Shown one piece after another: positions 4,039 through 54,108 of a stretch of 54,108 bases of DNA. The stretch covers positions 1-54,108 of the forward strand of contig NIVC01004226.1 in the NCBI GenBank assembly GCA_002269645.1, in the 5' to 3' direction. Both the position numbers and the translations under genes were made by a program. Positions within the stretch are counted from its first letter, which is position 1. Each line of letters starts with the position of its first letter. Below the pieces are notes generated by a model. The model did not search any database, had not been told where the DNA came from, and was given only the letters and a program-made list of their open reading frames with translations. The stretch comes from Macrostomum lignano (Eukaryota).

Positions 4039-4709
4039 CTGAGACTTTGGGTTAACCTTTTACAATTGCAGCTTTCAGTTAAACTTAACTTGGGTTAGAG
4101 ATGGCTGTAACAATAAGATCAGAGTGCATTATGAATTTTCCTAGGTTTTATGACAATATTCAAATAGAAATAAATGTATATTGCCAGTTTCAGAACAGGG
4201 GCAACTTTAGGTGCCAGGTTTTTTATGCCATGTGCCCACACTGCCCATGTTCTCATTGAGATAGTGAGAGCTAAAGTAAAGATGAATGCTTTTACCTTCA
4301 ATCTGTAGGCAGCTTATAAGTCCCTAGGATTGAAGACTCAAACAACAGAGATTTTTTGACATTACATATACGCATACATGCCCAAATTCAAAATTTCACC
4401 AAGCCATGCAACTTACTTTTTGACCAAAAATGCAACTTACCTATGAAAGAAATCCTAAATCAAAATTAATATACTTTTAGATAAACTGCAAGAGTAATTA
4501 TGACTGTATTACTAGGGCTAAATGCCTCATCATCTAATTAGTAATGCATCTATTTTTTCAGGTTGGCATTTTTGCTACTTACCTAGGCAAGACCTCTCAC
4601 CAACCAGATAAAATTGGCAGGGTCAGCCAAGTGTTAAGCATGTATTTACATACACATTCTGTGATTGAGGTAATAACTTCTATAACTATTAATATACTCG
4701 TATATACTC

Positions 4710-20486: not shown

Positions 20487-20524
20487 GCCAACTCAACAAT
20501 GCAGCCGCTGCAGCTAATGTGTGG

Positions 20525-28537: not shown

Positions 28538-31500
28538 ATGAGTTTAAGTAAAAAACAACCTGATCCTATAGCTGACGACTTTGAGGTAAGCTATATTTTG
28601 AAAATAATCTTCAAGATTCAATGGAAATTTAGAATGGAAATTTAGTTTCAAATAGAATAGAGAACTTTCCTTTCCTAAAAAAACACTGAACCTACTCTTA
28701 GTCTTAACTCTTATGTGTATTTAAATCACATAAATTCAGAAGAAATTCTATAATATATTTCCTTAATAAATCCCCATTTTCTTTTTCAGAATTCCATATT
28801 TGCTCCTCAAAAGCTATTTTAATAGAAACCACATAGGTCTAACATTGTCACTGTACGAAAAAAGTCAAATTAAATGCAAATAAAACATTTTTTTGCATAT
28901 TAAAAAATTATAAATCTTAATTTTCCATTATTATCAAAGCAAAGGAAACATTACCAGTACTTCTTTCTTGTTTCAAGAAAAAAATATTAAATGCAATAAA
29001 AGATTAATAATGCTTATCAATTGTGCTTATCTATCAACAGATGAATCTTGCTGAAGAGCCAGCACCAGAAGGTGAATCCAAGCACAAGGAGCAGCAGAGC
29101 AGGGACTCTTGGGGTGGCAAAGCAGAATTCCTGTTTTCTTGCCTCTCCTATGCTGTTGGCTTGGGAAATGTTTGGCGATTTCCCTACTTGTGTTACAAGG
29201 TGAATTAATTTATTGATTTTGCATGATCCTTCTATAGATATGCGCTCGTACATGTGATCTTAATTGAATGTTATTGTGCAACCTTACTGTACATTGAATA
29301 TATACTTTTAGTTCTTAGATTTATATTGTAGAATTGTTCATATCAGTGATACTGGCAATTCTCTTTAGAATTTAGCTAATATTATAGATTTTAATTGGTT
29401 TGTCAGTGCAACTGGTACAATTCAAATAAATTTATCATACAATTCCAACAAAATTACTTTTACTATTGTTTAAAATACAACAGAATGGTGGAGGCGCCTT
29501 TCTGCTACCCTTCATCTGCATGCTAGTGACTGTAGGAATTCCCCTGCTCTACATGGAGACCTGCTTTGGCCAGTACTCTGCCACTGGACCAATCACTGTG
29601 TGGAAGGCTAGCCCCCTGTTCACAGGTAAGAATTTAGCAGGATGTCTCTACACCTAAATTAAACTTTATTTAACTTGACAGCTTTTCATTTCCAAACAAT
29701 GGCAAACTTCACAATCCACAAAGTTCACAATCCCCAAGCTTCACAAGCAGTTGAGGTTTGCCCACTGTCAAGGCTTGATCAGCGAAACTAGAAAATTCGC
29801 AATAGGGTGTCCATAGTCACCTGGTGTCACCTGTTGAAGGTCCAGAAGCTCCGCCTACGTGAAGGCCAGTGACCAACGAAATCAGAGCTGATGCAGACCC
29901 ATATGATCGACGTGCTGATGAAATTTGGAGGCTTGGCAAGGCTGCACTGAGGTGTACTGAATACACTAAATCTGACCTTCTGGCAAAAATTATCGAATAT
30001 CTCGACGGTCCGGAGGGTTGGCGACTTGATTCCTGTTTGAGAAGGTGCAAAACAAAAAGTTAGCTCGTGTTTTTAAATTTCGTGTGCTTTGCTTTGTTTC
30101 CGTTTCAGAGGGTGAGAATCCCCTACTCCTTTGGTAGCTTAACAACGGTGCAGAAAAATGCTTGGTATTCCTACTGTTTGCCAGCCAAGCCCTGTTTGCC
30201 GTAGATTCGTAGAATCTTCATGGTTTATGACTCTTTGGGTTGATTATTCATGCTCTCACGCATTGGCCCATACGGCCTTAGCTTAAAATATTACGAGCTA
30301 GTAGCGGAGTGCCGCAAAAGGCTTCGCTAAAGGTTCCCATTTGCAGACATCTTAGGCGCACCGAATTTTGTAAACTTGGAGCCTGGTGTGACAAATAAGG
30401 CAAAATAGTAAGTTGGCTGGCTTCAGTCAAGGAATAAAACTGTTTCAGTACAAGAAAGACAAACTCCAGATTAATATTGCTTTTAGTAATCCTTGGCTCT
30501 AATTTCTATACTATTATCTATCTAGGAAAATCACGGCTAAGTAAAGAGCGGGCGTCCATCTCTCTCTCCACCCTTACTCAGCAGTTTCCTCAGTAGTTTT
30601 CCATTCATATTTTGGCCAGTCTATCTGAAATAAAATTACAGTGGAAGAGAACGAGAGAGAGAGAGACGTACAGCTTTAGCCATGGAGGGGGGTTGTTTGA
30701 GAGAGTCTGACAGCTACCCTACTGCAGGAGTTTTAGAATCTCAATGGCTTCTTAGTTATTTACCGACTATTTTTTTTAGTCTCTTTCTTTGTCTGCGAGA
30801 CTGCGGCCGTGTCGCGTGCGTCATGAGCACAGCTCGTGCTGCTATTGCTGCTGCTGCTGCTGCACCCGATGTGCAGAAGTGTTTTGTTGAACTTTTCTCT
30901 CTCATTAATAGCCCCTGATGACTGGAGGGGGGGGCTATGTGCAGCCTTCAATTATAGCCTTCACGACGTCTTTTTTTAGTTTTCCATGGAATATTTCCAA
31001 CAGACTAAGACCTATTGCCTGGTCTTGGCGGGGGTGAACTATACATACTTACATAGGTAATGATGAACTCTCTAAAAAGTTTTTCCTAGTAGTTACGAAC
31101 TCAATTTTCGAGTACTTAAGACTGGAAGCATTGAACACATTGTCTGACCTAATTAATGTCTTAACCAAGACTAATATGACCATCAAGTGGCTATTACAAC
31201 AACAATCTATGTAATAAAAAGGGTCTAATATTTGAATAAATAAACTCTGATGTCAAGGCTCATGCGGAGAATTTCTCAAGGCAAATAGGATTCAGATAAA
31301 TAATTTTTGTCCCTTGCTTATTGGGCGCCCCGAAGGGGGGTTCTAGATTGCTAGTGATAAACTAGAACTTTATTTCCAATTTTGTCATCACCTGCCGATG
31401 CTCATGGACCTCTCCCAATCACCTGCTGATTCTCATGGACATCTCTCCCAATCACCTGCTGATTCTCATGGACCTCTCCCAATCACCTGCTGATTCTCAT

Positions 31501-34500
31501 GGACATCTCTCCCAATCACCTGCTGATTCTCATGGACCTCTCCCAATCACCTGCTGATTCTCATGGACATCTCTCCCAATCACCTGCTGATTCTCATGGA
31601 CATCTCTCATACAATCACCTGATTCTCATGGACATCTCTCCAATCACCTGGTGATTCTCATGGACATCTCTCATACAATCACCTGATTCTCGTGGACATC
31701 TCTCCAATCACCTGCTGATTCTCATGGACATCTCTCCCCCAATCACCTGCTGATTCTCATGGACATCTCTCATACAATCACCTGATTCTCGTGGACATCT
31801 CTCCAATCACCTGCTGATTCTCATGGACATCTCTCATACAATCACCTGATTCTCGTGGACATCTCTCCAATCACCTGCTGATTCTCATGGACATCTCTCA
31901 TACAATCACCTGATTCTCGTGGACATCTCTCCAATCACCTGCTGATTCTCATGGACATCTCTCATACAATCACCTGATTCTCATGGACATCTCTCCAATC
32001 ACCTGCTGATTCTCATGGACATCTCTCATACAATCACCTGATTCTCATGGACATCTCTCCAATCACCTGCTGATTCTCATGGACATCTCTCCCCCAATCA
32101 CCTGCTGATTCTCATGGACATCTCTCACAATCACCTGCTGATTCTCATGGACATCTCTCACAATCACATGATGATTCACGTGGACAACTCACTCCCCACT
32201 CCCGTGCAACCTCTCAGGACTCGTTGTGTTCGCCCTGGATATTTACTAAAATTCCTAACTACATTAAACATTAAGAAAGCACAATCTACTAATTTTATGC
32301 AAGTCAACCGAACTGTATATACAACAGTAACGCACTCCCAACAATTTCCCTCATTTTTACAAAACAGGCATCGGTTGGTCGATGATTATCATCACATTTT
32401 GCGGCAGCATCTACTACAACATGCTGATCGCTTGGACGATGTTCTACTTCTGGCAGAGCATCAGCTCAGTGACTGGCGACCTGCCCTGGACCACGTGCAG
32501 CTCCAGCTGGAACACCGGCGACTGCGTGCACATTCGCACCTTGTCGGAGCGAAATCGGTGCAGGCGTCAGGGCGGGTTCTTCGCTTTCGCTCTGAACCAC
32601 AGCTGCCTGCTGCCCAACAACGCCAGCTGGGTGATGGAGTCTTCGGATGGGGCCATGAGGCCGTTTCCTGGAAACGACACGCCCGACGGTACCGCCTTGT
32701 CGACATTCTACGACGAAGCCGCGACGTTGAACTCCACGAATACCAGCCTGCTGCACAACTTTCTGGGCTCCGTGCCCGCGCCCAAGACCTCCAGCGACGA
32801 GTACTTTCAGTGAGTAGCCCGTAAATTCCGCAACAGCTTAGCTGTACATGCCATGACTTCTCAGGGTGGGTTGTCTTTAGACATGCCTGCAAGATTAGAA
32901 ATTCATTGCCGCTGTACACCCTGAGTGAGCGTGTGTATGAGTGCTGTGCCTGCACTCTGACTCAGGAGTCAGCGGAATGTGCAGAATTGCGTCAGCGCAA
33001 CTACAAGCATATTATTATTAACTTAATGCTCTTTGAAACACTGTACCTGGCTATTAACTTTTTAACCGCTATATTCCAGCAACTTCGTCCTGTCTATCTC
33101 AAACGGATTTCACGAGATGGGCTTGCCGAAATGGGAACTGGTCCTCTGCCTGCTGGCCTCTTGGATTGTGGTGATCCTCTGCCTGATTCGGGGAGTTAAA
33201 TCTGCTGGAAAAGTGAGTTTCATTCGATCCCCCTGTACACCTTGTGTGAGCGTGAGAGGCACGAGTGCAGTTGCCTCCTCGCTTTCTACTGGTCGACTAC
33301 CCCACTGCAGTTATTCTCCTACACGTAAATTTGCACTGCACTTTTCTAGTGTGACTAGCAATGCATCATCAACGTAGCAATTAGCAGTCAACACGGCAAA
33401 TGATGTTTTATTGCGCAGTTGGAGTGGCCCATCTAGGGGTAAATAGAATCTGTGGCATGAACTGAGTCTCATGCCAATGACTTTGCACTGATTCAGATGG
33501 TTTTTTGGCCATAGACATTTTTGCAGCGACGGGGCTGTAATTAATAGATAATTAGAAGCTTTTCAAAGGCGAGCATTTTTTCGAGCAGATTCGAGTTTGT
33601 AAAGACTCGAGTTTGTGAAGATTTGAGTTTGTGAAGATTCGAGTTTGTGAAGATTCGAGTTTGTAAAGATTCGAGCTTGTGAAGTTTCAAGTTTGTGAAA
33701 ATTCGAGTTTGTGAAGATTCCAGTTTTTGAAAATTCGAGTTTGTGAAGATTCCAGTTTGTGAAGATTTGAGTTTGTGAAGATTTGAGTTTGATAAAGCCC
33801 CTCGCTGTTGCTCGAACTTATTGTCGAATAATATATCCAGTGGTTATCAAGAAATAAAAGTCGCATATCTTTACAGAAAATTCCCTAGAGGTACCCCACA
33901 GCTACTAGGCTCACTTACACTTTGACCGTTGACCTACTTTGATACAAATCTGCCCGACTTTGATCTGCCTGACCACTCTCTCTCTCTTACAGTTTTTATT
34001 AGCTTCTAGACTTAGGACTAAGAAGAGTATAAAGTTTATTCAAATAACAAGCTAGATGTATCGCCGGTTTATAAAGCTTAGCCGGCTTGATTCACACTAA
34101 AACAGTGTTGCTGGCGTGTGACTAAGTAAAAAAACCCATCAGAAATATACAAAACCTAATAATTAGTTAGCATTAGATTTGTGTAAAGTTAGAGTTCATT
34201 TACCTAAATAGCATACATGTGAATTAACTTTGGCCAGATTTTATACATTTAGAGGTCACGGGAACATACCTGGTATGATAATATTGCACTATCATCATCA
34301 GACTACTGCCCAGCAGTAGACCACACGGAAAATTTGATCTATATTTATTGTGTTTAATAAGAACACAGAAAACATCTATCAAATCTCAACTCTTTAAATG
34401 ATAAAGAAATTTTTTTTACATTGCAGGCTGTGTATTTCACAGGGTTGTTTCCATACCTTGTGCTCACTATTCTGCTGATTCGTGGACTCACTCTGGAAGG

Positions 34501-37500
34501 CAGCTCAAAGGGTTTGGAGTACTTTTTCATTCCCAACTGGGATCGGCTGGCCGACGCGAAGGTCTGGGGCGACGCCGCGATGCAGGTACACTTTGTACTT
34601 TTTCTCTGACAGCCTGAGTCAGCTAAATGAAATCTACAAAAAATAACAACATTTTCCGCAGGTGTTTTTCTCCCTAGCCAGCGGCTGGGGCGGCATCATC
34701 GCTTTGAGCAGCTACAATAAATTCCATAATAACGCTTTGCTGTGAGTTTCTCATATTTTATATATTTTACCTTGATATGAGCATAGCGGCTTACAAAAAC
34801 AGCCAGTATTTTGAAGCAATTTTGCGAATTAAAAATAAATCAATATTCAGTGACTCCCTTCTGGTGTCACTGGGCGACGGCGCCACGTCAATCTATGCCG
34901 GTATGACCGTCTTCTGCGTGCTCGGCTACATGAGTCACGTGATGTCTGTGCCCATCGACGAAGTAGCCAAGGATGGTGAGATGCTCATTCGGTCTTGAAA
35001 GTTTCTATATATCGATGAAGGAACATTTGGCATGATTTCAGGCGCCGGTTTGGCCTTTATTCTCTACCCGGACATTGTGACTTCGATGCCCGTGTCGCCG
35101 CTGTGGGCCGCTCTATTCTTTGGCATGCTGCTCACCCTCGGCTTTGGCACCATGATTGCCAATGTGAACACGCTGGTTACATCCGTGTGCGACAATTGGA
35201 GCCGGCACCTTAGCATCGGCAAACGGCCTTTCATTGTGCTCTGCGCCATCTGCCTGCTGGCCTTTGTCTGTGGCCTGCCCTGCACAACTCGGGTGCGAGA
35301 TGGTTCTGAAGCTTATGTTTTTTAGCTCAGGCTCATTAAATTAGGTTTTGGACACACACTGAATAGACCGCGTGATAAGATAGAGCAGATGAGTAGCAAA
35401 GTTATGGCACCCCAAGTGCTGGCGCCCCAGGTGCTGGCGCCCCAGGTGCTGGCGCCCCAGGTGCTGGCGCCCCAGGTGCTAAATCCTCTGGTGCTAAAGC
35501 CCCTGGTGCTAAAGCCACTGGTGCTAAAGCCCCTGGTGCTAAAGCCCCTGGTGCTAAAGCCCTGGTGCTAAAGCCCCTGGTGCTAAAGCCCCTGATGCTA
35601 AAGCCCCTGGTGCTAAAGCCCCTGGTGCTAAAGCCCCTGGTGCTAAAGCCCCTGGTGCTCAAGCTCCTGGTGCTAAAGCCCCTGGTGCTAAAGCCCCTGG
35701 TGCTAAAGCCCCTGGTGCTAAAGCCCCTGGTGCTCAAGCTCCTGGTGCTAAAGCCCCTGGTGCTAAAGCCCCTGGTGCTAAAGCCCCTGGTGCTAAAGCC
35801 CCTGGTGCTAAAGCCCCTGGTGCTAAAGCCCCTGGTGCTAAAGCCCCTGGTGCTAAAGCCCCTGGTGCTCAAGCTCCTGGTGCTCAAGCTCCTGGTGCTA
35901 TCTATTGTGTTTGACTGCAACCAAAATTCTCAGACAAATATCTATGATAAGACTTAAAGCTTCTCAATATTCCGTTCCATCGAGAATTGAAAATTAGTTT
36001 GAACAGACTATCGAGCACTTGAAGCTAATTATATTATTATTATTCAGGGTGGAATGTTCGTTCTGCAACTGCTGGATAACTACAGCTGCACCTATTCTGT
36101 TCTCGTGGTTGGATTCCTAGAGCTGGTAGTCATCACCTGGGTGTACGGAGCTGACAATTTTCTAGACAACATCGAGGAAATGAACCCTTTTATTCGAAAG
36201 TCCCGAGTCTTCTGGCGAATTGTCTGGCAGTTCTTCTCGCCGTTGGTACTCGTCTCTGTGGCTATTTTCACCTTCACGTCGATTAAGCCGTCAAAGTACG
36301 GCCTGTACGAGTTTCCGCCGAGCGCCGATATTACTGGCTGGGTGATCTCGATGCTTGTTGTCATGCCAATACCTGGAGTTGCTATCTATAAAGTTGTCAC
36401 GTTGAAGGGCAACATGTCGCTGAAGCAGGTAAGAAAGAGTTGTCTAGTTTTGATGTGAATGTATACTAGCCGTTGATGAAGCCGGTGCTCAGGAGTGAGC
36501 GGAATGGGCAGCACTACATTTATCAAATCAGACCGTGATTTGATATTTCGATAAACGTAGTTCTTGACATCAGATTTATCAAATGGGAAATCTTCGAACT
36601 GTCGTTACGTACTGATGATTGGCATGGGCTGTTTTCACAGCAATAAAACCTTTTTTTTAATAATGGGGCTTAGGCCGGCTAATGACCAAAACAGAGGCGT
36701 CGATATGGATCAAAGCCAAGTGGGGGGACAAAGCCAAGAATTCAACATGTACATGTACATGACTAAATTTTGGCACTCATTTTGGCGCCGCAGGCACTCA
36801 TTTTGGCGCTGTAGGCACTCATTTTAGCGCTGTAGGCACTCATTTTGGCGCCGAAGGCACTCATTTTGGCGCCGAAGGCGCTATATTTCGGCGCCCTGAA
36901 GAAACATTATTGATTACCACAACGACTCACAAGATGGGGTGGGGGAACAAAGCATTGGCATGTCCCCCCAGAGATTTTACTGGGGGGGGACATGTCCCCT
37001 CTGTCCCCCCCCCCGGTGGCGACGCGCCCAGACCAAAAAGTGTTCTTTTTAAGCATGCTCAGTCATACTCTTTCTTATTTCCAACAGAAGATACACAGCC
37101 TGATGCTGCCCCACCGCAGCTGGGGCCGCGAGATGGGCAAGAAGGTCCGCCGCCGTTCCAGAGTCGGCAACGAAGACATGAACGGCGACGGACTGCCGTT
37201 CGAGACGTCCCAGGTGAGTAACGTCAAATGGATCAAATTTTAGAGGCTCGTGCGCTTGATAACCAAGAATGACGATGTGCATCCTGTGGGAGTGTGTGCC
37301 TGCGTACGTATCTGTTATGACTGTTGGTGTGTTCGCTGGCTTTGGAACGACTGTCCGTTTGATTTGCGTCCGTGTCAACATGTCAACCAAACCATGCAGG
37401 ATCATAAAAATAGGAATTTTTAATCTAAACTTTTCAGCACACTGTTGTAGAGTGGAACGCTGGCTTGAAACCTTCGACATTGTAGTCAATAGTCAAAGAC

Positions 37501-42500: not shown

Positions 42501-45500
42501 GTCTCTTAGGTGGGTGTCCCTGTCTCTTAGGTGGGTGTCCCTGTCTCTTAGGTGGGTGTCCCTGTCTCTTGGTGGGTGTCCCTGTCTTCTGGGTGTCCCT
42601 GTCTCTTGGGTGGGTGTCCCTGTCTTCTGCGTGTCCCTGTCTCTTGGGTGGGTGTCCCTGTCTTCTGGGTGTCCTTGTCTCTTAGGTTGGTTCCCTGTCT
42701 CTTAGGTGGATGTCCCTGTCTCTTAAATGGGTCTTAGGTGGGTGTCCCTGTCTCTTAGGTGGGTGTCCCTGTCTCTTAGGTGGGTGTCCCTGTCTCTTAG
42801 GTGGGTGTCCCTGTCTCTTGGTGGGTGTGTCCCTGTCTTTTAGTTTGGCACCGCTATCTCTTAGGTCGGCCGCACTCAAAAAAGCAAAACCAACTCTGGC
42901 GAACTCAAGAGTCACGTGCTCTCCTCTCAATATAGTTGTTTTGAATCAAGTTGAGTTGGAATTATCTGCCGAGTTCAACAATAAACAGCAAGATGCACAC
43001 CCAGAGGTACAGCTTCTGTATGCATAGCTAATGTGCCTAAGTGTTTTTAGTTTTGGGGGTGTGTCTCTTGAACGCGAGAGCCAAAAATGAAGCATTTATT
43101 GTTAAGCTTGAATTCTTTAACTCTGCTGGGTTTTCTATTACCCGCTCAAATATGTTTGAGCAGGTATGTGATAGCAGTTTTTTACGCCAACCCTAGTACG
43201 AGGTTACTCACCTCCATGACTCATCCTACTTGATATCAAGCCGGACTCAGGCTCCAACTCTTTTTTTGTTCTTTTACTTGCGGCCAAAACAAAATTATTG
43301 CTGTTCCTCCTTTGCGTTTGCGTGAATTTAGCGCTAGCTCGTAGCAAAGGTCAACTTCGTCAAACAGATGCATCTCTTTAGTGATTTTCAAATTTTGTGA
43401 TTTTGTGATTTTAATTTTGTGATTCTCAAAAGATAGACTTTTGCATTAAAATATTCATGACCGATAGTATCAATATTTTCTCACAGATTCTCGTGGACAT
43501 CTCTCCAATCACCTGCTGATTCTCATGGACATCTCTCATACAATCACCTGATTCTCGTGGACATCTCTCCAATCACCTGCTGATTCTCATGGACATCTCT
43601 CATACAATCACCTGATTCTCATGGACATCTCTCCAATCACCTGCTGATTCTCATGGACATCTCTCATACAATCACCTGATTCTCATGGACATCTCTCCAA
43701 TCACCTGCTGATTCTCATGGACATCTCACTCCCCACTCCCGTACAACATCTCTCAGGAGTCATTGTGATCGCCCTGGATATTTAATAAAGTTCCTAACTA
43801 CATTAAACATTAAGAAAGCACAATCTACTAATTTTATGTAATTCAACCGAACTGTATATACAACAGTAACGCACTCCCAACAATTTCCCTCATTTTTACA
43901 TAACAGGCATCGGTTGGTCGATGATTATCATCACATTTTGCGGCAGCATCTACTACAACATGCTGATCGCTTGGACGATGTTCTACTTCTGGCAGAGCAT
44001 CAGCTCAGTGACTGGCGACCTGCCCTGGACCACCTGCAGCTCCAGCTGGAACACCGGCGACTGCGTGCACATTCGCACCTTGTCGGAGCGAAATCGGTGC
44101 AGGCGTCAGGGCGGGTTCTTCGCCTTCGCTCTGAACCATAGCTGCCTGCTGCCCAACAACGCCAGCTGGGTGATGGAGTCTTCGGATGGGGCCATGAGGC
44201 CGTTTCCTGGAAACGACACGCCCGACGGTCCCGCTTTGTCGACGTTCTACGACGAAGCCACGACATTGAACTCCACGAATACCAGCCTGCTGCATAACTT
44301 TCTGGGCTCGGTGCCCGCGCCCAAGACCTCCAGCGACGAGTACTTTCAGTGAGTATCCTGCAAATGCCGCAACAGCTCAGCTGTACACGCGTCTGATTCT
44401 CGTGCCATGACACATCGGGGCGGTTGTCTTTGCTGCAAAATGCATTAACGCAATGCATGAAGATCTAGGACTAGTTTTTTAGTTTTATTTGCACAAAATC
44501 ATCCACAGTTCTCAACGTCTATCGAAACTTCCAAATTGCTTGATTAAGCAAAAATTGTGCTTTGTGCAAGGTCGATTAAAGAAGCAGCTGTTTCAGAAAT
44601 TCTGTCGATGAAGCTTGGCAAGCAAGTCGGCATTTTGATGATATGATGAATCATATGATGAATTCTAAAGTTCAGAAAAGTGATAAATGTGTCAGTTGAG
44701 TGCTGATAAGACCGTTAACAGGGCCTGAGGATTCTCATTAACTGCACGAACTCCATCTATATTAAAACTCTTATTTCAGCAATTTTGTTCTGTCCATATC
44801 GAACGGTTTCCACAATATGGGGCTACCGAAATGGGAGTTGGTGGTCTGTCTGCTGCTAGCGTGGATTGTGGTTGTCATATGCCTGATTCGCGGCATTAAA
44901 TCGGCTGGTAAGGTGAGTATTGCATTGCTTATTAATCTGCTAAGGGGTGGCATCACAAACATATATATATTTTGGGTGATATTTCGGTGATATTTCGGGT
45001 TTGTTATATTTCAGGTTTGGGATATTTGGGGTTTATGATATTTGGGGTTTGTTATATTTCGGGTTTGGGATATTTAGGGTTTGGGATATTTGGGGTTTGT
45101 GATATTTCGGGTTTGGGATATTTCGGGTATGTTATGTTTCGGGTTTGGGATATTTCGGGTTTGTGATGTTTCGGGTTTGTGCTTTTTCGGGTTTGTGATT
45201 TTTCGGGTTTGTGATGTTTCGGGTTTGTGATTTTTCGGGTTTGTGATTTTTCGGGTTTGTGATTTTTCAGGTTTGTTATATTTCGGGTTTGTTGTATTTC
45301 GGGTTTGGGATAGTTCGGGTTTGTGATATTTCGGGTTTGTGATGTTTCGGGTTTGGGAAATTTCGGGTTTATGATGTTTCGGGTTTGGGAAATTTCGGGT
45401 TTGGGAAATTTCGGGTTTGTGAAATTTCGGGTTTGGGAAATTTCGGGTTTGGGAAATTTCGGGTTTGTGATATTTCGGGTTTGTTATATTTCGGGTTTGG

Positions 45501-47087
45501 GATATTTCGGGTTTGTGATATTTCGGTTTGTGATACATGTACATGTATTTCGGATCTGTGATGGCGACCCTCTGCAAATAAGAGTTACATGTAGCCAACA
45601 ATGATTGATAGATTGTGTTGGCATGGCCGAAGTTTAACAAACGTTACTGTTCCAGTGATTGACCTAATAGTAGACATGAGTAGTTGTTAACCATTGACAA
45701 AACGATAAACTGTATGTAAAGCATTCGTTAAGCATTTTTTGCTACTATTTGTGATAAACTACTAGCAAAAACATTATTCTACCATACTATAGTATCCAAG
45801 CGCTGAATGGAACAGTCTGATTCACTCACGGTAAGCTCATTAGGTCTTCACATGTTTCAACAGATATCTAAATGAAACTGGTGGTGATTTTAGAGAATAT
45901 ATATCTAAACATACTTTTTTATAATCAGCTTTATTCTAACGATAAATTACTTTTAATGTTTGTCAGATTCTACTGAATGATTATCAGATTCTACTGAATG
46001 ATTATCAAATTATACTAAATGATTATTTCATTTACATGTAACTGCCTCATTACTAACTCATCATTAATTATTAATCCAGGGGGTTGCAGCTTAGTGGTTT
46101 GAGCGTCGGTCTCACGACTTGAAGGTCGGGGGTTCGATTCCCGATCCCACTGGAACAATTTGTGTCCTTGAGCAAGACACTTAACTCTGCATTGCTTCAG
46201 TTCACCCAGCTGTAAAATGGGTGCCAGCATTAGCTGGGGTAATTGAGGGTGTGTGGCTACCCCCCAGTCCTTGGACTGAACAGCCGTACGCAGCCTTCAG
46301 ATGCGCCGCGCAATAGCTGCGGCTGAGCTGTTGGTTGCACATCTGCCCATTTGGGGCAGGTGTAATCAATTATTATTTTTTAATTCATCAAATTCATTGA
46401 TCAATAATTAAACTTTACAAGCATTTTAAAAACCCATGGAATAACTTAATTTGTACCTTTGTAATTTACTTAAAACAATTCAGTCAGATAAATATCGAAA
46501 ACTATTCGAAATTCCTTCCACGTCAAAAGTGAGGTACTTGTGCTCTAGCCAAGTTTATTGGCCCAGCATTGCAATCCCACGCAAAGCCCAGCACGGTTCG
46601 CGCAAGCCGAATATAGAATTCTCTTGTACAGAATAGAAATCAAAACGCAAGTAAACCGAGTGCCAACAAACACTGCGTGTCTATTGTGAGAACTGGGGCT
46701 TGAACTCGAGATTATACAAGCAACGCATGGGTTTCATCATTTTGGGTAGCTTTAGGCTATATGCAGAGAATACAGTAGAGTACGGAATATAGAGACGGAA
46801 AGAAGCAAAGAACGGTAGTAGTGCGCGGCTCGTACCAGAATGAATGAGAGAAAGTCGTAAAAGCGCTTCGGATTGCACGCATGACTAAAAGCCGTCCAAC
46901 CTGAAAATGTAAAACGAGCGCGCAGAAAATTAATTTACCTGCAGCTGCTAGCAAGAGTTGCAGGAAAAACAGGGGGCGAATAAAGCACTCTGGATTTGTC
47001 AGAAGAGCTCCATTGAATGCGCTTAGCATTGAATTCAACTCTAATAGAAGCTCTAAGGCGGTGATGCAGCAAAGACAGCAGCAGCAT

Positions 47088-47130
<43 letters not shown>

Positions 47131-50100
47131 TAAAGCTGCAGGCAAAACCAGACATTGGGACCGACAGCGGCGAGGAGCTCTCGGACACCGAAGGATTCGT
47201 CTCGGACATTTGTCAGTACTGCAACTCGTCAGAGCTCAGTGATTTATTACTCATTGTTCGACGTTCAGAAGAGGACGATCTGAGCTCGGAAGAAGCTGAA
47301 GATTGCAACGAAAATGGCGGACAATTTGCACAGCTCCGGCAACGAGAATTTCACGCTCACAAATTCGTCCTAGCGAAGTCGTCCGAGTTCTTCCGGACGA
47401 TTCTGTACAGCGCGAACTGGCCGGCCCCGTCCGTGTCCGCTTCGTCCAACTTCGCCGCTGAAAGAAGCCTGTGCGAGCTGGTCGAAGATGATGCCTGTTT
47501 TCAGTGCTTTGAGCATTTCTTGCGCTTCCTGTACGCTGGTCGAGTTTTTATTAACAGGGCTACGGCGATTGGTGAGTGTGATATGCAATAAAGTCGTTGC
47601 TTTCCCTACTTCCGTTCAGTACCTGAAGTCTTTCAGGTACCCCAAACCCCAGAAACTCCGACGTACACGAACTCAATTAACTGCATCTGTTGTGTTATGA
47701 AGTTCCGCTCAACAGAAGCAAATTTGTTGGCTAGTGCATGGCTTATATATAGGCCTCCTGAAGTAGCGTTTCAGTCTATTCAGTCAGGTTCTCTGACCAC
47801 AGTTCCCCAATTTTTAACTTTTCTACACATCATTCCTCTGAATGTTAAAAAGTGAACATCAGTGCATTGGCCTTATATGCATGTACTTTCTTTGTTTTTA
47901 AGCTTCCTACATTTTTATATCTCTAAACTATTTTACTTTATTCACAACTCTGCGCATACACCTTAACTTACCAATCTAATTAATGCCTTCCGACTAACTT
48001 AACAACCTACCAGCATAACATTACAGTGCGATCTAACAACCTACTAACAGATACAAACCAAAGTCTATTATCAATCTTTCAGCCTACCTCCCTAACCTAC
48101 TAAACTGCCTACCCATGCTTACATACATGTACTTACAACGCATCCGTAAACTATAGAAAATCTTTCCTTCCACCAACACAGGCCTACTACGCCTAGCCGA
48201 CAAGTACCAGGTGTGGTCGTTGAGACAACAGACGGAGCAATTCATGACGGAAAATGCCCAGCCACCAAACATACGCAACGCCGTTTTATGGTATCCCTGG
48301 CGAAACACCTGCAGCTGGATAAACTGGCAGCCACCTGCTTTAACACCGTCTGCTGGAATGCTAAACAGGCTGTCGAGCTGGACGAGTTTCTCGAGGTTGG
48401 TCCCGATTTCGTCCGGGACCTGTTGCACACAGGCAAGCTGGTGATAGAAGACGAATACGCTGTACTGCGACAGCTGCTACTGCCATGGCTGGGCGTTGGC
48501 GACAGATTTCAACGATACGTCGTAGAGATGCTGCCAATGATTCGATTCCCGATGATGTCGGCTAAACAACTCTGGGAGCTGGAGTCATCGAGGTGAAGAC
48601 TCGGTTTTAACTCTGCAACTGAAAGTTCGTCTTAGGAACTTAGCTTCATCAACAAGCAAACCATAAAAGCCATAAAATCAATACTACGAGGTGTTTTGAA
48701 AGGGTTATAAGAGAATAAGATTGAGCTCTTACGTCAACTCAAGCCTATCGATTTTTCATTTGCAATACCTCTTGGGCTGACTGAGACATAGAGACGTCAG
48801 ACTAATTTTCATATTTTACGGTCGGTACCAGAACTAAGTATTTTTTATTAGAGGCAGGGGCTGTGTGCACACGTACCCTGGCGCACTTTAAGCGACATTG
48901 TCGCACAACCGACGAGAAGCATTGCTGCCCATTCCGCCGACTCCTCTGAGGAGGATACGTAGGCAGTCATGCGCACAGGCACATACATAGAAGTGTACAG
49001 CGGCCCTAACTTTATTTATCGTTAGGCATGTACACTTCACTGTGCCTTGGGGTTGGCCCTCATGGATGTGAATTGCACGAACAGAGCCAAGCCGAGATTC
49101 CAATTTAGCCCCAAATTGATGTCACTGCACTTGGAATCGAGCGCCGCGCTGGACCACTGAGATAGAAAAGTTTTTTCAAAGACCAAATTTAATTTTTACA
49201 GCCTCAGTCAGACGGAAGAGTCCAACAAGCTCCTAGGCGACTTGATCGCCAAAGCCTATCGCTACAGAGCACTGTGCCCCTGGCAACACGAGCTCAAACA
49301 GGCCGAATTTTCTAGTAAATTCTATCGACCGAGAAGCTACATGTGCCTGGCTGTGGACAATATCAAAGTTGGCAACACAATGCGCTTCGGTTTACAGGTA
49401 ATTAATTGATCAATAAAATTAAACTGGGACACAAGATGAGAGTGTTGTATCACTTAAGCAGCAGGGTAGTCGTGTTCTTCTTGGATTAACTAGGGTACAT
49501 ATACTAGCACTCTCCTTAAGGTCGGGGTTTCGATTCCCGATCCCACTGGAACAATTTGTGTCCTTGAGCAAGACACTTAACTCTGCATTGCTTCAGTTCA
49601 CCCAGCTGTAAAATGGGTGCCAGCATTAGCTGGGGGTAATTGAGGGTGTGTGTGGCGACTGAACAGCCGTATGCAGCCTTCAGGTGCGTCGCGTAATAGC
49701 AGCGGCTGAGCTGTCGATGGCAAATCTGGCCTAACTGGCCTATTAAATTATTAATGCCCTAACAGAAAAACAATATGAATTATAGTTTCAGCTTTTATTT
49801 ACTCCACCTTGCCTTACTGGCTTCAGCTACCCTGCAGTGTGTTTCCATATTTGCTTAAGCTTTTCATCGGTAGCTATTCTATTTTTATCGTTCTTTTCAA
49901 GTAATAGTGACCTCGCGAGAAGGTCCACTTGGCTGTGGATCACGTGATATTTCTCTAATTAAGTTTCTTTTCCTAGTGTCCACATGCGCCTATAGATACC
50001 TAGTTGATACTTCAATACTCCGCTGGTAGCTACTTGAAGTAATGTTTAGTTGACTTGGTTGACCATAGTTGAAAAAATTAAGTGTCTTTAGTCTTTATGA

Positions 50101-53029
50101 GTTCACTGATGGGAACTCGCTTCTTTGTACTAACATAAAAGATTTAGACTCCGTTCTTAGGTCATAATATTATATCGGATTCTTAGTTTCTTAATTCTAT
50201 GAAAAGGCATAAAAATGGACCAAAGTTCTACTTCTACAAGATCATCTTCAACTGCCATTTCTTAGGTAATGGCGTCCAACTTCCAGATCTTTGTTTCGAG
50301 GTCAAAAATTCTATGATGAGGTTTTTAGATACCGTTTTTGGGTCAAAGTTTCTTCGACAAGACTGGACAAGACGTCTAGTTTCCGTTTCTGGAGTCGAAG
50401 GGTCAAAGTTATTCGACTAGACATCGAGTTTCCGTTTCTGGGATTAAAACCTCTACGACTAGACATCGAGTTTCCGTTTCTGGGATTAAAACCTCTACGA
50501 CTAGACATCGAGTTTCCGTTTCTGGGATCAAAGCTTCTACGACTAGACATCGAGTTTCCGTTTCTGAGATCAAAGCCTCTACGATTAGACATCGATTTCC
50601 GTTTCTGGGATCAAAGCCTCTACGACTAGACATCGATTTTCCCTTTCTAAAGATCAGAGGCTCTACGGCATAACATGCAACATACGTTTCTGAGATGAAG
50701 GCTCTACAAAGTGGTTTGTTTTAATAACAACTGTACTGCCAGTATTTTTATAAGCGTTGCTAAATTTACTTCCTTCTGCTCTAGGTTGAGATCCGCACCC
50801 AATCCGGTCCAGTCCCGAGCCCCATCCGGGATGCGACTGGAAAATGGGCTATCAGAAGTCGTGCGACAACTGGACTTTCAAGTTGGTGTCGCAGGAGTCC
50901 AGCTTCCCAGCCGGCACTGGAGTGACAGTAGACTTGGTGGCCCTGTGCGAGAACGATTCCGGCGATATCGTGAACTATTTCCGAGAGAAGAACTTTCAGT
51001 TTTGCCGCAGCTCACAGTTTCACCAGTGCCAGTTCGACATTGGCAAGGGGCCCGGCAGACGGGATGCAAAGACTTTGCACATCCTATTGAGGATCACCTC
51101 TCCTAAGGTTCCGCCTGCTACGTAGACGCTGCAACTTGAATTGAGTTTGAAAACAGAAATAACTGTGTCAACTGGTCTTGCCATTCGACAATATTAGACA
51201 ATTGTCGGCCGAAGTTCCCCAGTGTCTGTAGACGTCGATGACACATTATTTGCTTTTGCATTACATCGACGGATAACGACGTAATACTTTGTTTAGTTAG
51301 GTTGCTTGGCCAATACTATTACATCATGTACATTGGATCGTGTCTAGTTCCAATGTTCTCCTGTCAACCCTGTTATTTCAACAGTCAATGTCACTAAAAA
51401 TGTTCTGTGGATGATGAATTGATCTGTGATTTTTTATCTCGATCAAATTTATTACACAGGCGTGTTTTTTTGCATCTATCCTATTGATAATCCGTGCCTT
51501 ATATAATTATCAATGTAGCGACTTCGAAAGATGGTGAACTATGAATATTATAGTGTAATAAATACAAAACCTTTATTACTGGATCCTTACTGTTTTACAG
51601 ATTTTAAACTCAAATCAAATCCTCAAATCCTCAAAAGAATGCACCGACTTGAGCAGGTCAGAGGAACTTTGAATAAATTTTCGTCTCTCTTTGCGTGGTA
51701 CTTAATATTTTGTTTTTAAAAGTTTACGACTGTTTAATATTTTAATAGAACATTTAATATCGTATAGTCTCCAATTTTGCATCAATTTTTCATCACCTGC
51801 AGGCCGTGTACTTCACGGGTATATTCCCGTACCTAGTGCTCACGGTTCTGCTAATTCGTGGACTCACTCTGGAAGGCAGCTCCGACGGTTTGACTTATTT
51901 TTTCATACCAAAATGGCAGAGACTGGCCGACGCAAACGTTTGGGGCGACGCGGCGATGCAGGTGAATTTTGTTGACAGGCTAAATTTGTTCGGCTACGCA
52001 TTGCTAAAGAGTCGTAGAGGCTTGAGCAGAGAAGCTTGAAGACGCGGAGAGTCACTGAATCCCTCACCAAAGTACCTGACAGGAGTTCCCTTCCGCAGAC
52101 TGCAGCTACAGTACTTTTGGGGCTCGAGCACGGATCTTTAGTTAGCGATCGCTTGTCCTGCAATTCATGCTCATGAGGGTCAACCCGTAAAATCACAGAG
52201 CCTGACTATGAGGAAGTCAGGTTTGCTGTACACCTTGTGTGAGCGTGTGCCAGTACGTATCCGTGGTATCCTTCTGAACGGAAAGAACCTAGCCGATTTG
52301 AACCTGAACTTCTTAATTGTTACTTCTACGTAAAAATGCGACGCCTATAGGTCCTAATCTACATCAGGATATTAGACCTAAAATTATGCTTTTCATTAAC
52401 AATCTGCGCAGGTATTTTTCTCCCTATCAAGCGGTTGGGGTGGAATCATCACGCTGAGCAGTTATAACAAATTTCGGAACAACGCCTTGCTGTGAGAACT
52501 ATAATTAGCAAATTTCTTTTATCTAATTGAAGTTCGATTCAAATTTCTGTTTCGAATATAAACAAATTTTAACAAATCATTTTATAGAGACTCTCTCATT
52601 GTTTCTTTTGGCGACGGCGCCACGTCAATCTATGCCGGCATGACCGTCTTCTGCGTGCTTGGCTACATGAGTCACGTGATGTCTGTGCCCATCGACGAAG
52701 TAGCCAAGGATGGTGAGGTGTTCATTCGGTCTTGAAAGTATCTATATATCGATAAAGGAACATTTGTCATGATTTCAGGCGCTGGTTTGGCCTTTATTCT
52801 CTACCCGGACATTGTGACTTCGCTGCCCGTGTCGCCTCTGTGGGCCGCTCTATTCTTTGGCATGCTGCTCACCCTCGGCTTTGGCACCATGATTGCCAAT
52901 GTGAACACGCTGGTTACATCCGTGTGCGACAATTGGTACGCTCAACTAGGCACAGGGCGTCGGCCATTGATTGTACTTTGTGCCATCTGCCTGCTGGCTT
53001 TCGTCTGCGGTCTGCCCTGCACCACTCAG
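39508..53029 (+). CDS. SLC6 GlyT-like transporter (paralog B), exons 1-9; 3' end outside window
   Basis: Exons 39508-39555, 40179-40334, 40911-41052, 43907-44348, 44780-44912, 51803-51961, 52412-52491, 52588-52712, 52779-53029. Same phases and, except exon 2 (156 vs 159 nt), the same lengths as paralog A; open frame throughout. Confidence 0.93.
40390..40648. repeat. ~40-bp tandem repeat (TACACCTGGATAATTGGTGTAGATAACAGAGTAGGGGTTCAGC) in SLC6-B intron 2
   Basis: About 6 imperfect units. Confidence 0.85.
41135..42835. repeat. 21-bp minisatellite (GTGTCCCTGTCTCTTAGGTKG) in SLC6-B intron 3
   Basis: About 80 units with recurring variant blocks; source of all the CPCLLG/VSLSLR ORFs. Confidence 0.96.
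43486..43727. repeat. Shorter copy of the ~29-bp minisatellite of SLC6-A intron 3
   Basis: Same unit variants in the homologous intron position. Confidence 0.93.
44973..45531. repeat. 16-bp minisatellite (GGGTTTGTGATATTTC) in SLC6-B intron 5
   Basis: About 35 units starting 60 nt after the donor. Confidence 0.93.
46079..46375 (+). mobile_element. tRNA-derived CORE-type (MIR-like) SINE, near full length
   Basis: tRNA-like head with A box (TAGTGG) and B box (GGTTCGATTCC), then TGTGTCCTTGAGCAAGACACTTAAC..CTGTAAAATGGG resembling the MIR/CORE domain, and an ATT-rich tail. Confidence 0.75.
47064..51125 (+). CDS. BTB-BACK protein, BTBD17-like, nested in SLC6-B intron 5; two apparent -1 frameshifts
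   Basis: Exons 47064-47571 (polyQ; BTB: [26 protein letters not shown]), 48182-48592 ([10 protein letters not shown]; BACK: [22 protein letters not shown]), 49202-49397 (KAYRYR..FYRPRSY) and 50785-51125. Splice phases are consistent if one G is restored at ~48299 and one at ~50847. Confidence 0.85.
49518..49755 (+). mobile_element. 5'-truncated second copy of the CORE-type SINE
   Basis: Near-identical to 46123-46320 from AAGGTCGGGG..TTCGATTCCCGATCCC onward. Confidence 0.8.
50378..50645. repeat. 42-bp tandem repeat (ACTAGACATCGAGTTTCCGTTTCTGGGATCAAAGCCTCTACG) in BTB gene intron 3
   Basis: About 6 units. Confidence 0.9.

Positions 53030-54108
<1,079 letters not shown>

What the first reader, a model, noticed from the sequence alone, without database searches (positions are those of the whole stretch)
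29511..52615. Both SLC6 paralogs have a rewired chloride/Na1 site (TM2 Tyr>Phe plus TM7 Asn>Asp): candidate Cl-independent animal SLC6 transporters
Seen: TM2 reads [10 protein letters not shown] in both genes (codons 29511-13 and 40938-40) where animal SLC6s have ..PY. TM7 reads [10 protein letters not shown] (34876-78 and 52613-15) where GlyT2, GAT and SERT have Asn (e.g. GlyT2 TNSATSIFAG). The TM6 Gln and Ser and the TM7 Ser are retained. Known, from memory: SERT Y121/Q332/S336/S372 bind Cl- and N368 binds Na1. An Asp at the Asn position occurs in insect KAAT1 (D338, cation selectivity) and in Cl-independent bacterial NSS such as MhsT. Inference: the fixed Asp charge replaces chloride, giving a Cl-independent or cation-promiscuous glycine-type transporter. 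The otherwise GlyT-like pocket (TM3 YY, TM6 WGG, TM8 LGFGTM) makes this an unusual combination.
Basis: partly seen in the sequence, partly recalled or inferred. Interest (0 to 1): 0.75.

Follow-up and report, generated by a model that had tools for sequence, protein, structure and literature searches.

The report
Flatworm glycine-type transporters with altered chloride site
Two neighbouring amino-acid transporter genes of the flatworm Macrostomum lignano really do carry the two unusual ion-site residues, but the same pair is shared by a large old subfamily in molluscs, annelids and flatworms and resembles known chloride-independent transporters, so it is a plausible, untested variant rather than a one-off oddity.

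Summary
Both genes have Phe where SERT has Y121 (codons 29511-13 and 40938-40) and Asp where SERT has N368 (34876-78 and 52613-15). The TM6 Gln/Ser and TM7 Ser are retained. The genes are tandem SLC6 paralogues of Macrostomum lignano. Both splice cleanly and are under purifying selection (dN/dS 0.14).

The pair is not special to them. Among the 120 closest homologues plus both genes, 36 have Phe, and all 36 also have Asp. These come from molluscs, annelids and flatworms and fall in one clade on my tree. Scallops gained the pair independently. In a broader SLC6 sample, Asp occurs in about 17% of cluster representatives.

The mechanism has precedents. KAAT1 D338 is linked to weak Cl- dependence. 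Cl--independent human B0AT1 has the same Tyr>Phe change, while Cl--dependent SIT1 and GlyT1 keep Tyr and Asn.

New here: Asp-bearing SLC6s split into types. KAAT1-like ones keep Tyr and add a TM2 Lys/Arg. The window genes have Phe and no Lys, so the Asp charge is uncompensated.

Weak or absent Cl- dependence is plausible (about 0.5) but untested. KAAT1-like K+ coupling is not supported. Verdict: new variant of a known kind, moderate interest.

The parts
28538..38030 (+). Gene A: complete SLC6 (GlyT1-like, Asp-type) gene. 12 coding exons: 28538-28585, 29041-29199, 29484-29625, 32368-32809, 33080-33212, 34427-34585, 34662-34741, 34851-34975, 35042-35292, 36048-36428, 37088-37213, 37908-38030 (TAG stop).
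   Evidence: All junctions are GT-AG. 99% identical to the M. lignano model P0001. Pfam SNF 610 bits.
40179..53029 (+). Gene B: tandem paralogue. 8 coding exons lie in the window: 40179-40334, 40911-41052, 43907-44348, 44780-44912, 51803-51961, 52412-52491, 52588-52712, 52779-53029. The gene is cut after this last exon (TM8-9) by the end of the window.
   Evidence: GT-AG junctions. About 92% amino-acid identity to A. P0002 from another assembly matches at 92-99% per exon and continues through TM9-12 and the C-terminus, so the gene is intact in the genome.
29511..29513 (+). Gene A F63 (TTC): TM2 position of SERT Y121, LeuT Y47 and SIT1 Y47, a chloride ligand.
40938..40940 (+). Gene B F62 (TTC): same TM2 position.
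34876..34878 (+). Gene A D381 (GAC): TM7 position of SERT N368, LeuT N286 and KAAT1 D338, an Na1 ligand next to the Cl- site.
52613..52615 (+). Gene B D380 (GAC): same TM7 position.
34583..34673 (+). Gene A retained TM6 Cl-/Na1 ligands Q345 (34583-85, last codon of its exon) and S349 (34671-73, next exon). Gene B equivalents: 51959-61 and 52421-23.
34888..34890 (+). Gene A S385 (TCA): TM7 Ser at the SERT S372 / LeuT E290 position, retained and not acidic. Gene B: 52625-27.
35146..35151 (+). Gene A G449-T450 in TM8 (LGFGT): Gly at the Na2 Asp position of SERT, GlyT2 and PROT, as in human GlyT1 and SIT1. Gene B: 52883-88.
29538..29540 (+). Gene A I72 in the TM2 'GIP' motif, the position of KAAT1 Lys102. 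No compensating Lys/Arg in either gene. Coordinates are computed from F63 at 29511-13 plus 9 codons within the same exon.
   Evidence: offset calculated
31944..32848 (+). Gene-conversion tract shared with gene B (43486-44387): the EL2 exon plus the upstream 64-bp minisatellite. 93% DNA identity; exon dS 0.088 against 0.49 for the whole gene.

Best explanation
The window holds two tandem, intact, selectively constrained SLC6 amino-acid transporter genes of the flatworm Macrostomum lignano. They belong to an old spiralian subfamily of GlyT1-like transporters, found in flatworms, annelids and molluscs. In this subfamily the TM7 Na1-site Asn is Asp, and in most members the TM2 chloride-ligand Tyr is Phe. 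The most likely working model is Na+-coupled uptake of a small neutral amino acid. In that model the carboxylate of D381 sits beside Na1 with no TM2 Lys/Arg to balance it, and supplies the negative charge that bound Cl- provides in GlyT1, GlyT2 and SERT. Loss of the Tyr hydroxyl removes one Cl- ligand. Transport should therefore depend weakly or not at all on Cl-. The Asp may be protonated on the return step, as proposed for LeuT E290 and MhsT D263. Shown here: gene structures, residue equivalences, conservation, coupling of the two substitutions, and absence of KAAT1-type partner residues. Inferred: everything about ion dependence, stoichiometry and substrate.
For: Identity: Pfam SNF 610 bits. 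The best solved relatives are GlyT2, GlyT1 and PROT. P0001, P0002 and P0003 are M. lignano proteins. Both copies are functional: clean splicing and dN/dS 0.137 at dS 0.49. Equivalence of F63, D381 and S385 to SERT Y121, N368 and S372. Subfamily: of 122 close sequences, 33 are F/D/G and 10 are Y/D/G, and Phe never occurs with Asn. All Asp-type GlyT1-like sequences form one clade in the NJ tree, with the flatworm genes inside it, and they share further signature residues: Y398, Y324, W104, I452 and T427, plus L479 in most members although gene A has Val there. A scallop F/D clade, sister to an Owenia Y/N sequence at 100% bootstrap, is an independent origin of the pair. Mechanistic precedent: Tyr47 is a direct Cl- ligand in SIT1 (PMC11217458). 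Cl--independent B0AT1 has Phe there, while Cl--dependent SIT1 and GlyT1 have Tyr. Cl--independent SLC6A15, A17 and A19 each have one non-conserved residue among the four SERT Cl- ligands, while Cl--dependent A18 and A20 keep all four (PMC6590891). KAAT1 D338 has been proposed as the cause of weak Cl- dependence (PMC8310414). MhsT Asp263 is the proposed stand-in for LeuT E290 (PMC4894957). Introducing a carboxylate one helical turn away makes GlyT1b Cl--independent (S339D/E). Uncompensated charge: Lys/Arg at the KAAT1-K102 position occurs in 10 sequences, all Tyr+Asp, and never with Phe (0 of 50). The window genes have Ile there.
Against: I found no transport data for any F/D member. Three of the Cl- ligands (Gln, TM6 Ser, TM7 Ser) are invariant, so a weaker Cl- site could persist. 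KAAT1 and CAATCH1, which carry the Asp, still lose up to about 50% of uptake without Cl-. B0AT1 is Cl--independent with Asn retained, so the Asp is not necessary for independence, and its role here could be something else, such as Na1 affinity or pH sensing. Monophyly of the Asp-type clade has low bootstrap support (30-38%). The F-D association statistics are not corrected for phylogeny. M. lignano lives in sea water, where Cl- is never limiting, so the selective advantage is unclear.
Confidence: 0.5

Rival explanations
1. The transporters remain substantially Cl--dependent. The TM7 Asp mainly tunes Na1 affinity, cation selectivity or pH sensitivity. Tyr>Phe only weakens a Cl- site that is still formed by Asn43, Gln345, Ser349 and Ser385.
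For: Gln, the TM6 Ser and the TM7 Ser are invariant in all Asp-type sequences. KAAT1 and CAATCH1, which carry the Asp, keep a partial Cl- dependence. SIT1 loses only about 40% of its current without Cl-, so dependence in this family is graded. 25 Asp-bearing sequences keep the Tyr.
Against: Phe is found only on the Asp background among the close GlyT-like homologues, and the pair arose twice, as expected if the Tyr hydroxyl becomes dispensable once the Asp is present. B0AT1, with the same Tyr>Phe change, is reported fully Cl--independent. A carboxylate 4 residues away abolishes Cl- dependence in GlyT1b. No compensating Lys is present.
Confidence: 0.3
2. KAAT1-like cation promiscuity: the Asp lets K+ or Li+ drive amino-acid uptake, as in the lepidopteran midgut transporters.
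For: The same position as KAAT1 D338, whose mutation alters cation selectivity. LeuT N286 mutation perturbs K+ binding at Na1 (PMC10945697).
Against: The features that accompany D338 in KAAT1 are absent. TM1 is the canonical SYAVGLGN rather than A66-T67-S68. The TM2 'GIP' position has Ile rather than Lys102. The genes lie in the GlyT/PROT branch, not the NAT branch (B0AT1+SIT1 split off at 100%). A marine animal has ample external Na+.
Confidence: 0.1
3. The substitutions are neutral drift in redundant or decaying duplicates and have no functional meaning.
For: M. lignano has many recent paralogues, the locus is repeat-rich, and both changes are single-nucleotide steps (AAY>GAY, TAY>TTY).
Against: Open reading frames are intact with canonical splice sites. 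dN/dS is 0.137. Asp is invariant in 40 of 40 Asp-type sequences across three phyla, and Phe is present in 31 of 40.
Confidence: 0.03

Closest known systems
Human GlyT1 (SLC6A9; PDB 8wfj, 6zbv)
   Same: SLC6 fold. TM1 is (G/S)[15 protein letters not shown]3 has IYYN and TM6 has xWGG with the pocket Trp. TM8 is LG(L/F)GT, with Gly at the Na2 Asp position. The nearest homologues are named 'GlyT1-like' by NCBI.
   Different: GlyT1 has Tyr in TM2 and Asn in TM7 (ITNCATS) and needs Cl-, keeping about 6% activity without it. The window genes have Phe and Asp. Orthology to vertebrate GlyT1 is not resolved on my tree (8% support). The pocket differs at the positions of LeuT V104 (Gly vs Ile), S256 (Ala/Ser vs Gly) and I359 (Asn vs Leu).
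Manduca sexta KAAT1 / CAATCH1 (insect nutrient amino-acid transporters)
   Same: Asp at the LeuT N286 / SERT N368 position (D338). That Asp has been proposed as the reason for weak Cl- dependence (PMC8310414).
   Different: KAAT1 pairs the Asp with TM2 Lys102 and has a non-canonical TM1 (A66, T67, S68). The window genes have Ile and a canonical TM1. The 10 sequences in my sets with Lys/Arg at that position all keep Tyr in TM2. I could not obtain KAAT1's own TM2 residue. KAAT1 belongs to a different SLC6 branch (NAT).
Human B0AT1 (SLC6A19; PDB 6M17) compared with SIT1 (SLC6A20; PDB 7Y75)
   Same: B0AT1 has the same Tyr>Phe change (GGGAFMIPF), keeps the TM6 Gln/Ser and TM7 Ser, and is reported Cl--independent. 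SIT1 keeps Tyr47, which binds Cl- directly, and is Cl--dependent.
   Different: B0AT1 keeps Asn in TM7 (IINGFTS) and has Ser in TM8. It belongs to the NAT branch, needs ACE2 or collectrin, and takes large neutral amino acids.
Bacterial NSS with a fixed carboxylate (LeuT E290, MhsT D263)
   Same: A protein carboxylate next to Na1 replaces Cl-. In MhsT it is Asp263, which by numbering (T231 = LeuT T254) falls on the LeuT N286 position, the same position as D381 here (the equivalence is my inference). The Na2 site has no acidic side chain, as here.
   Different: LeuT's charge sits one turn further along (E290 = Ser385 here). LeuT keeps Tyr47. These are prokaryotic proteins only distantly related in sequence.

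Membership tests
SLC6 / NSS (Pfam SNF, PF00209) | Full-length SNF domain above the curated threshold | tested here: met
   610.4 bits against a cut-off of 27, covering profile positions up to 523 of 524.
SLC6 / NSS (Pfam SNF, PF00209) | Conserved TM1 GLGNxWRFPY, TM6 QxFFSL and the Na1/Na2 backbone and side-chain ligands | tested here: met
   A38, G40, N43, Q345, S349, L446 and T450 are present. The only Na1 side-chain change is N>D at 381.
GlyT/PROT amino-acid branch of SLC6 | Groups with GlyT1, GlyT2 and PROT rather than with the B0AT1/SIT1 (NAT) branch | tested here: met
   PDB ranking is GlyT2 > GlyT1 > PROT. The clade excluding B0AT1+SIT1 has 100% bootstrap support.
GlyT1 (SLC6A9) orthologue | TM8 Gly at the Na2 Asp position and the TM6 Trp of the glycine pocket | tested here: met
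   LGFGT against human LGLGT; GWGG against AWGG.
GlyT1 (SLC6A9) orthologue | Phylogenetic grouping with vertebrate GlyT1 | tested here: inconclusive
   Human GlyT1 joins the invertebrate TM8-Gly clade at a node with 8% NJ bootstrap support.
GlyT1 (SLC6A9) orthologue | Canonical Cl- site (TM2 Tyr, TM6 Gln and Ser, TM7 Ser) plus the Na1 Asn | tested here: not met
   Tyr>Phe and Asn>Asp in both genes.
GlyT1 (SLC6A9) orthologue | Na+/Cl--coupled glycine transport | not testable with these tools
   Needs heterologous expression.
KAAT1/CAATCH1-type transporters | Asp at the LeuT N286 position | tested here: met
   D381 and D380.
KAAT1/CAATCH1-type transporters | TM2 Lys (K102) partner of the Asp | tested here: not met
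   Ile in the GIP motif. Lys/Arg there occurs only in Tyr+Asp sequences.
KAAT1/CAATCH1-type transporters | Non-canonical TM1 (A66, T67, S68) | tested here: not met
   TM1 reads S-Y-A-V-G-L-G-N. No A-T-S motif occurs in any of about 270 sequences examined.
Cl--independent animal SLC6 (B0AT1/B0AT2/NTT4 type) | At least one of the four SERT Cl- ligands substituted | tested here: met
   Tyr>Phe, the same substitution as in human B0AT1. The rule is stated in PMC6590891.
Cl--independent animal SLC6 (B0AT1/B0AT2/NTT4 type) | Transport unaffected by Cl- removal | not testable with these tools
   No functional data were found for any F/D member.
Bacterial-type fixed-carboxylate NSS | Acidic residue at the LeuT E290 position | tested here: not met
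   Ser385.
Bacterial-type fixed-carboxylate NSS | Acidic residue at the LeuT N286 position, as in MhsT D263 | tested here: met
   D381. The MhsT equivalence rests on numbering (T231 = T254, offset -23), not on an alignment made here.

The most novel reading that the evidence does not exclude
The F/D proteins could be a Spiralia-wide subfamily of neurotransmitter-branch (GlyT-like) SLC6 transporters that have gone back to the bacterial solution: a fixed, uncompensated carboxylate at Na1 in place of co-transported Cl-, possibly with H+ antiport on the return step. Evolution would then have found two mutually exclusive ways to accommodate a TM7 Asp. One keeps the Tyr and adds a TM2 Lys/Arg (KAAT1 type). 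The other has no Lys and converts the Tyr to Phe (this type). Such more electrogenic, Cl--free carriers could underlie the steep-gradient uptake of dissolved amino acids by soft-bodied marine invertebrates. That last link rests on my own background knowledge and was not tested here.
Probability: 0.25. Interest if true: 0.6.

Novelty: new variant of a known kind. Interest (0 to 1): 0.4.

Why it matters
Why eukaryotic SLC6 transporters need chloride, and why a few do not, is still only partly explained. B0AT1's independence, for example, rests on a single Tyr>Phe difference from SIT1. A naturally occurring, ancient and widespread GlyT-like subfamily that combines that Tyr>Phe change with an uncompensated Asp at Na1 is a ready-made evolutionary experiment. 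Y/N, Y/D and F/D relatives exist within the same phyla. They can be expressed side by side and interconverted by single-nucleotide changes to dissect chloride coupling, stoichiometry and possible proton antiport. There is also a practical point for annotation. Dozens of mollusc, annelid and flatworm proteins are named 'sodium- and chloride-dependent glycine transporter 1-like', and that may be wrong about both the chloride and the substrate. For these two genes specifically, the finding is ordinary membership of that subfamily.

Tried and rejected
I withdrew this after seeing that human GlyT1, engineered 6zbv and wild-type 8wfj alike, has LGLGTQF.

(2) A candidate C-terminal exon near 36570-36645 (…LRTDDWHG…) does not fit the intron phase. 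The real exons are 37088-37213 and 37908-38030, found through P0001.

I used the full-length paralogue P0003 instead.

(4) Primary papers on the Cl- site were not held: Forrest 2007, Tavoulari 2011, Kantcheva 2013 and Giovanola 2018. I therefore have no direct data on N368D or Y121F type mutants.

(5) I could not obtain KAAT1's TM2 residue. The review does not give it and no KAAT1-like TM1 motif is in my sequence sets. That KAAT1 is Tyr+Lys+Asp is only an inference from the 10 Lys/Arg-bearing sequences.

(6) The review's statement that B0AT1/B0AT2 mostly have Asp at this position is not true of human B0AT1, which has Asn.

(7) P0091, which I took for an insect NAT, is a duplicated-domain model closest to PROT and GlyT1.

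(8) I did not run structure prediction. The tool returns no coordinates, so side-chain geometry at the ion sites could not be checked.

(9) Literature searches for a characterised mollusc, annelid or flatworm member found none.
Full report
**Observation.**
The quoted residues are in the sequence at the quoted coordinates. In gene A, AAT GGT GGA GGC GCC TTT CTG CTA CCC TTC encodes [10 protein letters not shown], with the Phe codon at 29511-13. Gene B has the same peptide with TTC at 40938-40. GDGATS has its GAC at 34876-78 in gene A and at 52613-15 in gene B.

I reconstructed both genes from stop-to-stop open segments and splice sites. With help from a database model I also found gene A's first exon and its last two exons.

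- Gene A has 12 coding exons (28538-38030). All junctions are GT-AG and the gene ends at a TAG.
- Gene B starts at 40179, about 2.1 kb downstream on the same strand. It has 8 exons in the window.
- Gene B's next intron opens into a (GTTA)n array that runs to the end of the window.
- P0002, from another assembly, matches gene B at 92-99% per exon and continues through TM9-12. So gene B is complete in the genome.

**What the genes are.**
Protein A matches Pfam SNF at 610 bits. Its best solved relatives are GlyT2 (E 6e-155), GlyT1 and PROT.

The protein search identifies the organism as the free-living flatworm Macrostomum lignano. P0001 is 99% identical, P0002 is 91% and a third paralogue, P0003, is 73%.

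The A and B proteins are about 92% identical. Nei-Gojobori analysis gives dS 0.49, dN 0.067 and dN/dS 0.137, so both copies have been under purifying selection. The large EL2 exon and the minisatellite-bearing intron upstream of it are much more alike (exon dS 0.088; 93% DNA identity over about 900 bp). That indicates local gene conversion.

**Residue equivalence.**
The HMMER alignment to human GlyT2 puts F63 on Y233 and the Asp on the Asn of TNSATS. I aligned reference sequences transcribed from the PDB alignments. In that alignment F63, D381 and S385 fall on SERT Y121, N368 and S372. The literature equates SERT N368 with LeuT N286, an Na1 ligand, and SERT S372 with LeuT E290.

The TM6 Gln and Ser and the TM7 Ser are retained. 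Wild-type human GlyT1 has LGLGTQF, with Gly where GlyT2, PROT and SERT have the Na2 Asp. I had first taken this for a loss and corrected myself.

**How common the pair is.**
I tabulated three positions (TM2 Tyr / TM7 Asn / TM8 Asp) in the 120 best homologues plus genes A and B:

| State | Count |
|---|---|
| YNG | 65 |
| FDG | 33 |
| YDG | 10 |
| YND | 7 |
| FDD | 3 |
| WNG | 2 |
| LND | 1 |
| -DG (TM2 missing; partial model P0002) | 1 |

- Phe is never paired with Asn: all 36 Phe sequences have Asp.
- The F/D sequences come from gastropods, bivalves, annelids (Lamellibrachia, Ridgeia, Dimorphilus) and flatworms.
- In a bootstrapped NJ tree, all TM8-Gly sequences that carry the Asp form one clade, sister to a nemertean+annelid Y/N clade.
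- Support is 100% for the flatworm clade, 100% for the mollusc Asp clade, 87% for an annelid Y/D clade and 92% for the Y/N sister clade.
- Monophyly of the whole Asp group is recovered at only 30-38%.
- Shared signature residues support common ancestry independently: Y398, Y324, W104, I452 and T427, all present in the flatworm genes, plus L479 in most members (gene A has Val there).
- A scallop group with F/D and the TM8 Asp retained is sister to an Owenia Y/N sequence at 100%. This is an independent origin of the pair.
- The Y/D annelid clade branches first within the Asp group. That suggests N>D came first and Y>F followed, but the weak support makes this tentative.

A broader search scanned the 1.84 billion representatives of 50%-identity clusters, and I tabulated the 123 usable sequences among the best 150 hits:

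| TM2 / TM7 state | Count |
|---|---|
| Y/N | 67 |
| Y/D | 15 |
| F/D | 6 |
| F/N | 5 |

The rest have other residues or gaps at one of the two positions. Asp at this position is therefore common in animal SLC6 diversity, at about 17% of representatives. Phe is enriched on the Asp background (odds ratio 5.4, Fisher p 0.015). This test is not corrected for phylogeny. Phe is not exclusive to the Asp background.

**What is already known.**
- KAAT1 D338 is the LeuT N286 equivalent. Its mutation alters cation selectivity, and its charge was proposed in 2008 to explain the weak Cl- dependence of KAAT1 and CAATCH1 (PMC8310414).
- MhsT Asp263 is described as the functional counterpart of LeuT Glu290 (PMC4894957).
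- GlyT1b S339D/E keeps more than 80% of its activity without Cl-, against about 6% for wild type.
- In SIT1, Cl- is coordinated by N27, Y47, Q247, S251 and S287 (PMC11217458).
- The deposited sequences show that Cl--dependent SIT1 has Tyr / Asn / TM8 Gly. B0AT1, reported Cl--independent, has Phe / Asn / TM8 Ser.
- PMC6590891 states the rule explicitly. Cl--independent SLC6A15, A17 and A19 each have one non-conserved residue among the four SERT Cl- ligands, while Cl--dependent A18 and A20 keep all four.

So both substitutions have precedents in characterised animal transporters with reduced or absent Cl- dependence. What is not described, as far as I could find, is their combination in a GlyT-like lineage.

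**A new discriminator.**
KAAT1's Asp works with TM2 Lys102, which lies on the Ile of the conserved 'GIP' motif, and with a non-canonical TM1 (A66, T67, S68). I scored this across about 230 aligned sequences:

| Class | Count |
|---|---|
| Asp + Phe, no Lys/Arg (includes the window genes) | 41 |
| Asp + Tyr + Lys/Arg at the K102 position (KAAT1-like) | 10 |
| Asp + Tyr, neither | 15 |

Lys/Arg at that position never occurs with Asn (0 of 148) or with Phe (0 of 50). The window genes belong to the first class. They have Ile72 and a canonical TM1 (SYAVGLGN). The F/D class therefore carries an Asp with no nearby compensating positive side chain. This fits the idea that its charge substitutes for Cl-. 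It argues against a KAAT1-like mechanism.

**Most likely mechanism.**
The proteins are probably Na+-coupled carriers of a small neutral amino acid. D381 would help bind Na1 and supply the negative charge otherwise given by Cl-, and the Cl- ligand Tyr has been lost. I give about 0.5 to markedly reduced or absent Cl- dependence and about 0.3 to substantial residual dependence, since Gln, Ser and Ser are retained and KAAT1 shows partial dependence. I give about 0.1 to K+/Li+ promiscuity and almost nothing to drift.

The substrate cannot be called from sequence.
- The pocket keeps the GlyT Trp in TM6.
- It has Gly at the LeuT V104 position and Ala/Ser at the LeuT S256 position.
- It has Asn at the LeuT I359 position, the position of SIT1 N410, which that paper links to preference for secondary amino acids.

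**Membership.**
- SLC6/NSS: yes.
- GlyT/PROT branch: yes, at 100% against B0AT1+SIT1.
- Orthology to vertebrate GlyT1: unresolved (8% support), although the TM8 Gly and TM6 Trp agree.
- KAAT1 type: no, because the Lys and the TM1 signature are absent.

**Novelty and verdict.**
The claim of an unusual combination specific to these paralogues does not hold, and the mechanistic idea is an extension of published ones. What remains of interest is at the level of the subfamily. It is old, widespread, uncharacterised and probably mis-named. It has a coherent, testable change in the ion site, and the data show an apparently exclusive choice between two partner substitutions for the Asp. I rate it a new variant of a known kind, with interest 0.4.

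Noticed in passing
window 28538-44112 (P0001 = UniProt A0A1I8GB13): The public 896-aa protein model is a chimera. It joins all of gene A, through a GT donor just before the stop (…GGGVN|), to the ATG exon of gene B, and then runs on into gene B's EL2 exon. It also uses an alternative acceptor that inserts TFGMIS after VAKDG. This is either a read-through transcript or a prediction artefact.
   Followed up: partly
window 46905-48593 (+), inside the 6.9-kb intron of gene B (44913-51802): A nested gene on the same strand. One ORF has a poly-Gln tract and a BTB/POZ domain (Pfam E 1e-8). A second has a BACK domain (E 3e-11).
   Followed up: partly
window 31944-32848 vs 43486-44387: A gene-conversion tract between the paralogues. 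It covers the EL2 exon and an upstream 64-bp minisatellite (93% DNA identity; exon dS 0.088 against 0.49 overall).
   Followed up: yes
window 17580-20492 (-): Exons of a small-conductance Ca2+-activated K+ channel gene on the minus strand: SK_channel domain (E 2e-43), a pore exon with TVGYGD (Ion_trans_2, E 8e-13) and a calmodulin-binding domain (E 1e-21).
   Followed up: partly
window 6362-7500 (+): A decayed mariner/Mos1-type transposon. The HTH_48 domain is detected (E 3e-10). The transposase reading frame is broken over several frames.
   Followed up: partly
window 3679-4059 (-): An ORF with a PHD finger (E 2e-5, just above the Pfam cut-off). It may be an exon of another minus-strand gene.
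   Followed up: no
window 53030-54105, and about 20 other arrays (e.g. 1567-2743, 41137-42732, 35424-35900): The window is packed with mini- and microsatellites. A (GTTA)n array of about 270 copies fills gene B's intron up to the window end, which probably marks an assembly break. Several arrays lie in SLC6 introns.
   Followed up: no
gene A N454 (35161-63), gene B N453 (52898-900): TM8 has Asn at the LeuT I359 position. This is the position of SIT1 N410, which the SIT1 structure paper ties to selectivity for secondary amino acids. GlyT1 has Leu there and GlyT2 has Thr. Mollusc F/D orthologues have Thr, so substrate preference may differ within the subfamily.
   Followed up: partly
P0091, P0171, P0173, P0182, P0192, P0202, P0204, P0236, P0239, P0267 (database proteins): A set of SLC6 proteins with Lys/Arg in the TM2 'GxP' motif (the KAAT1 K102 position). 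All have Tyr in TM2 and Asp in TM7. This suggests that the KAAT1-style Asp-Lys pair is a wider, recurrent arrangement.
   Followed up: partly
PMC8310414 compared with PDB 6M17: The review says that B0AT1/B0AT2 orthologues mostly have Asp in place of the Cl--site Asn. The deposited human B0AT1 sequence has Asn (IINGFTS), and its difference from SIT1 is Tyr>Phe in TM2.
   Followed up: yes
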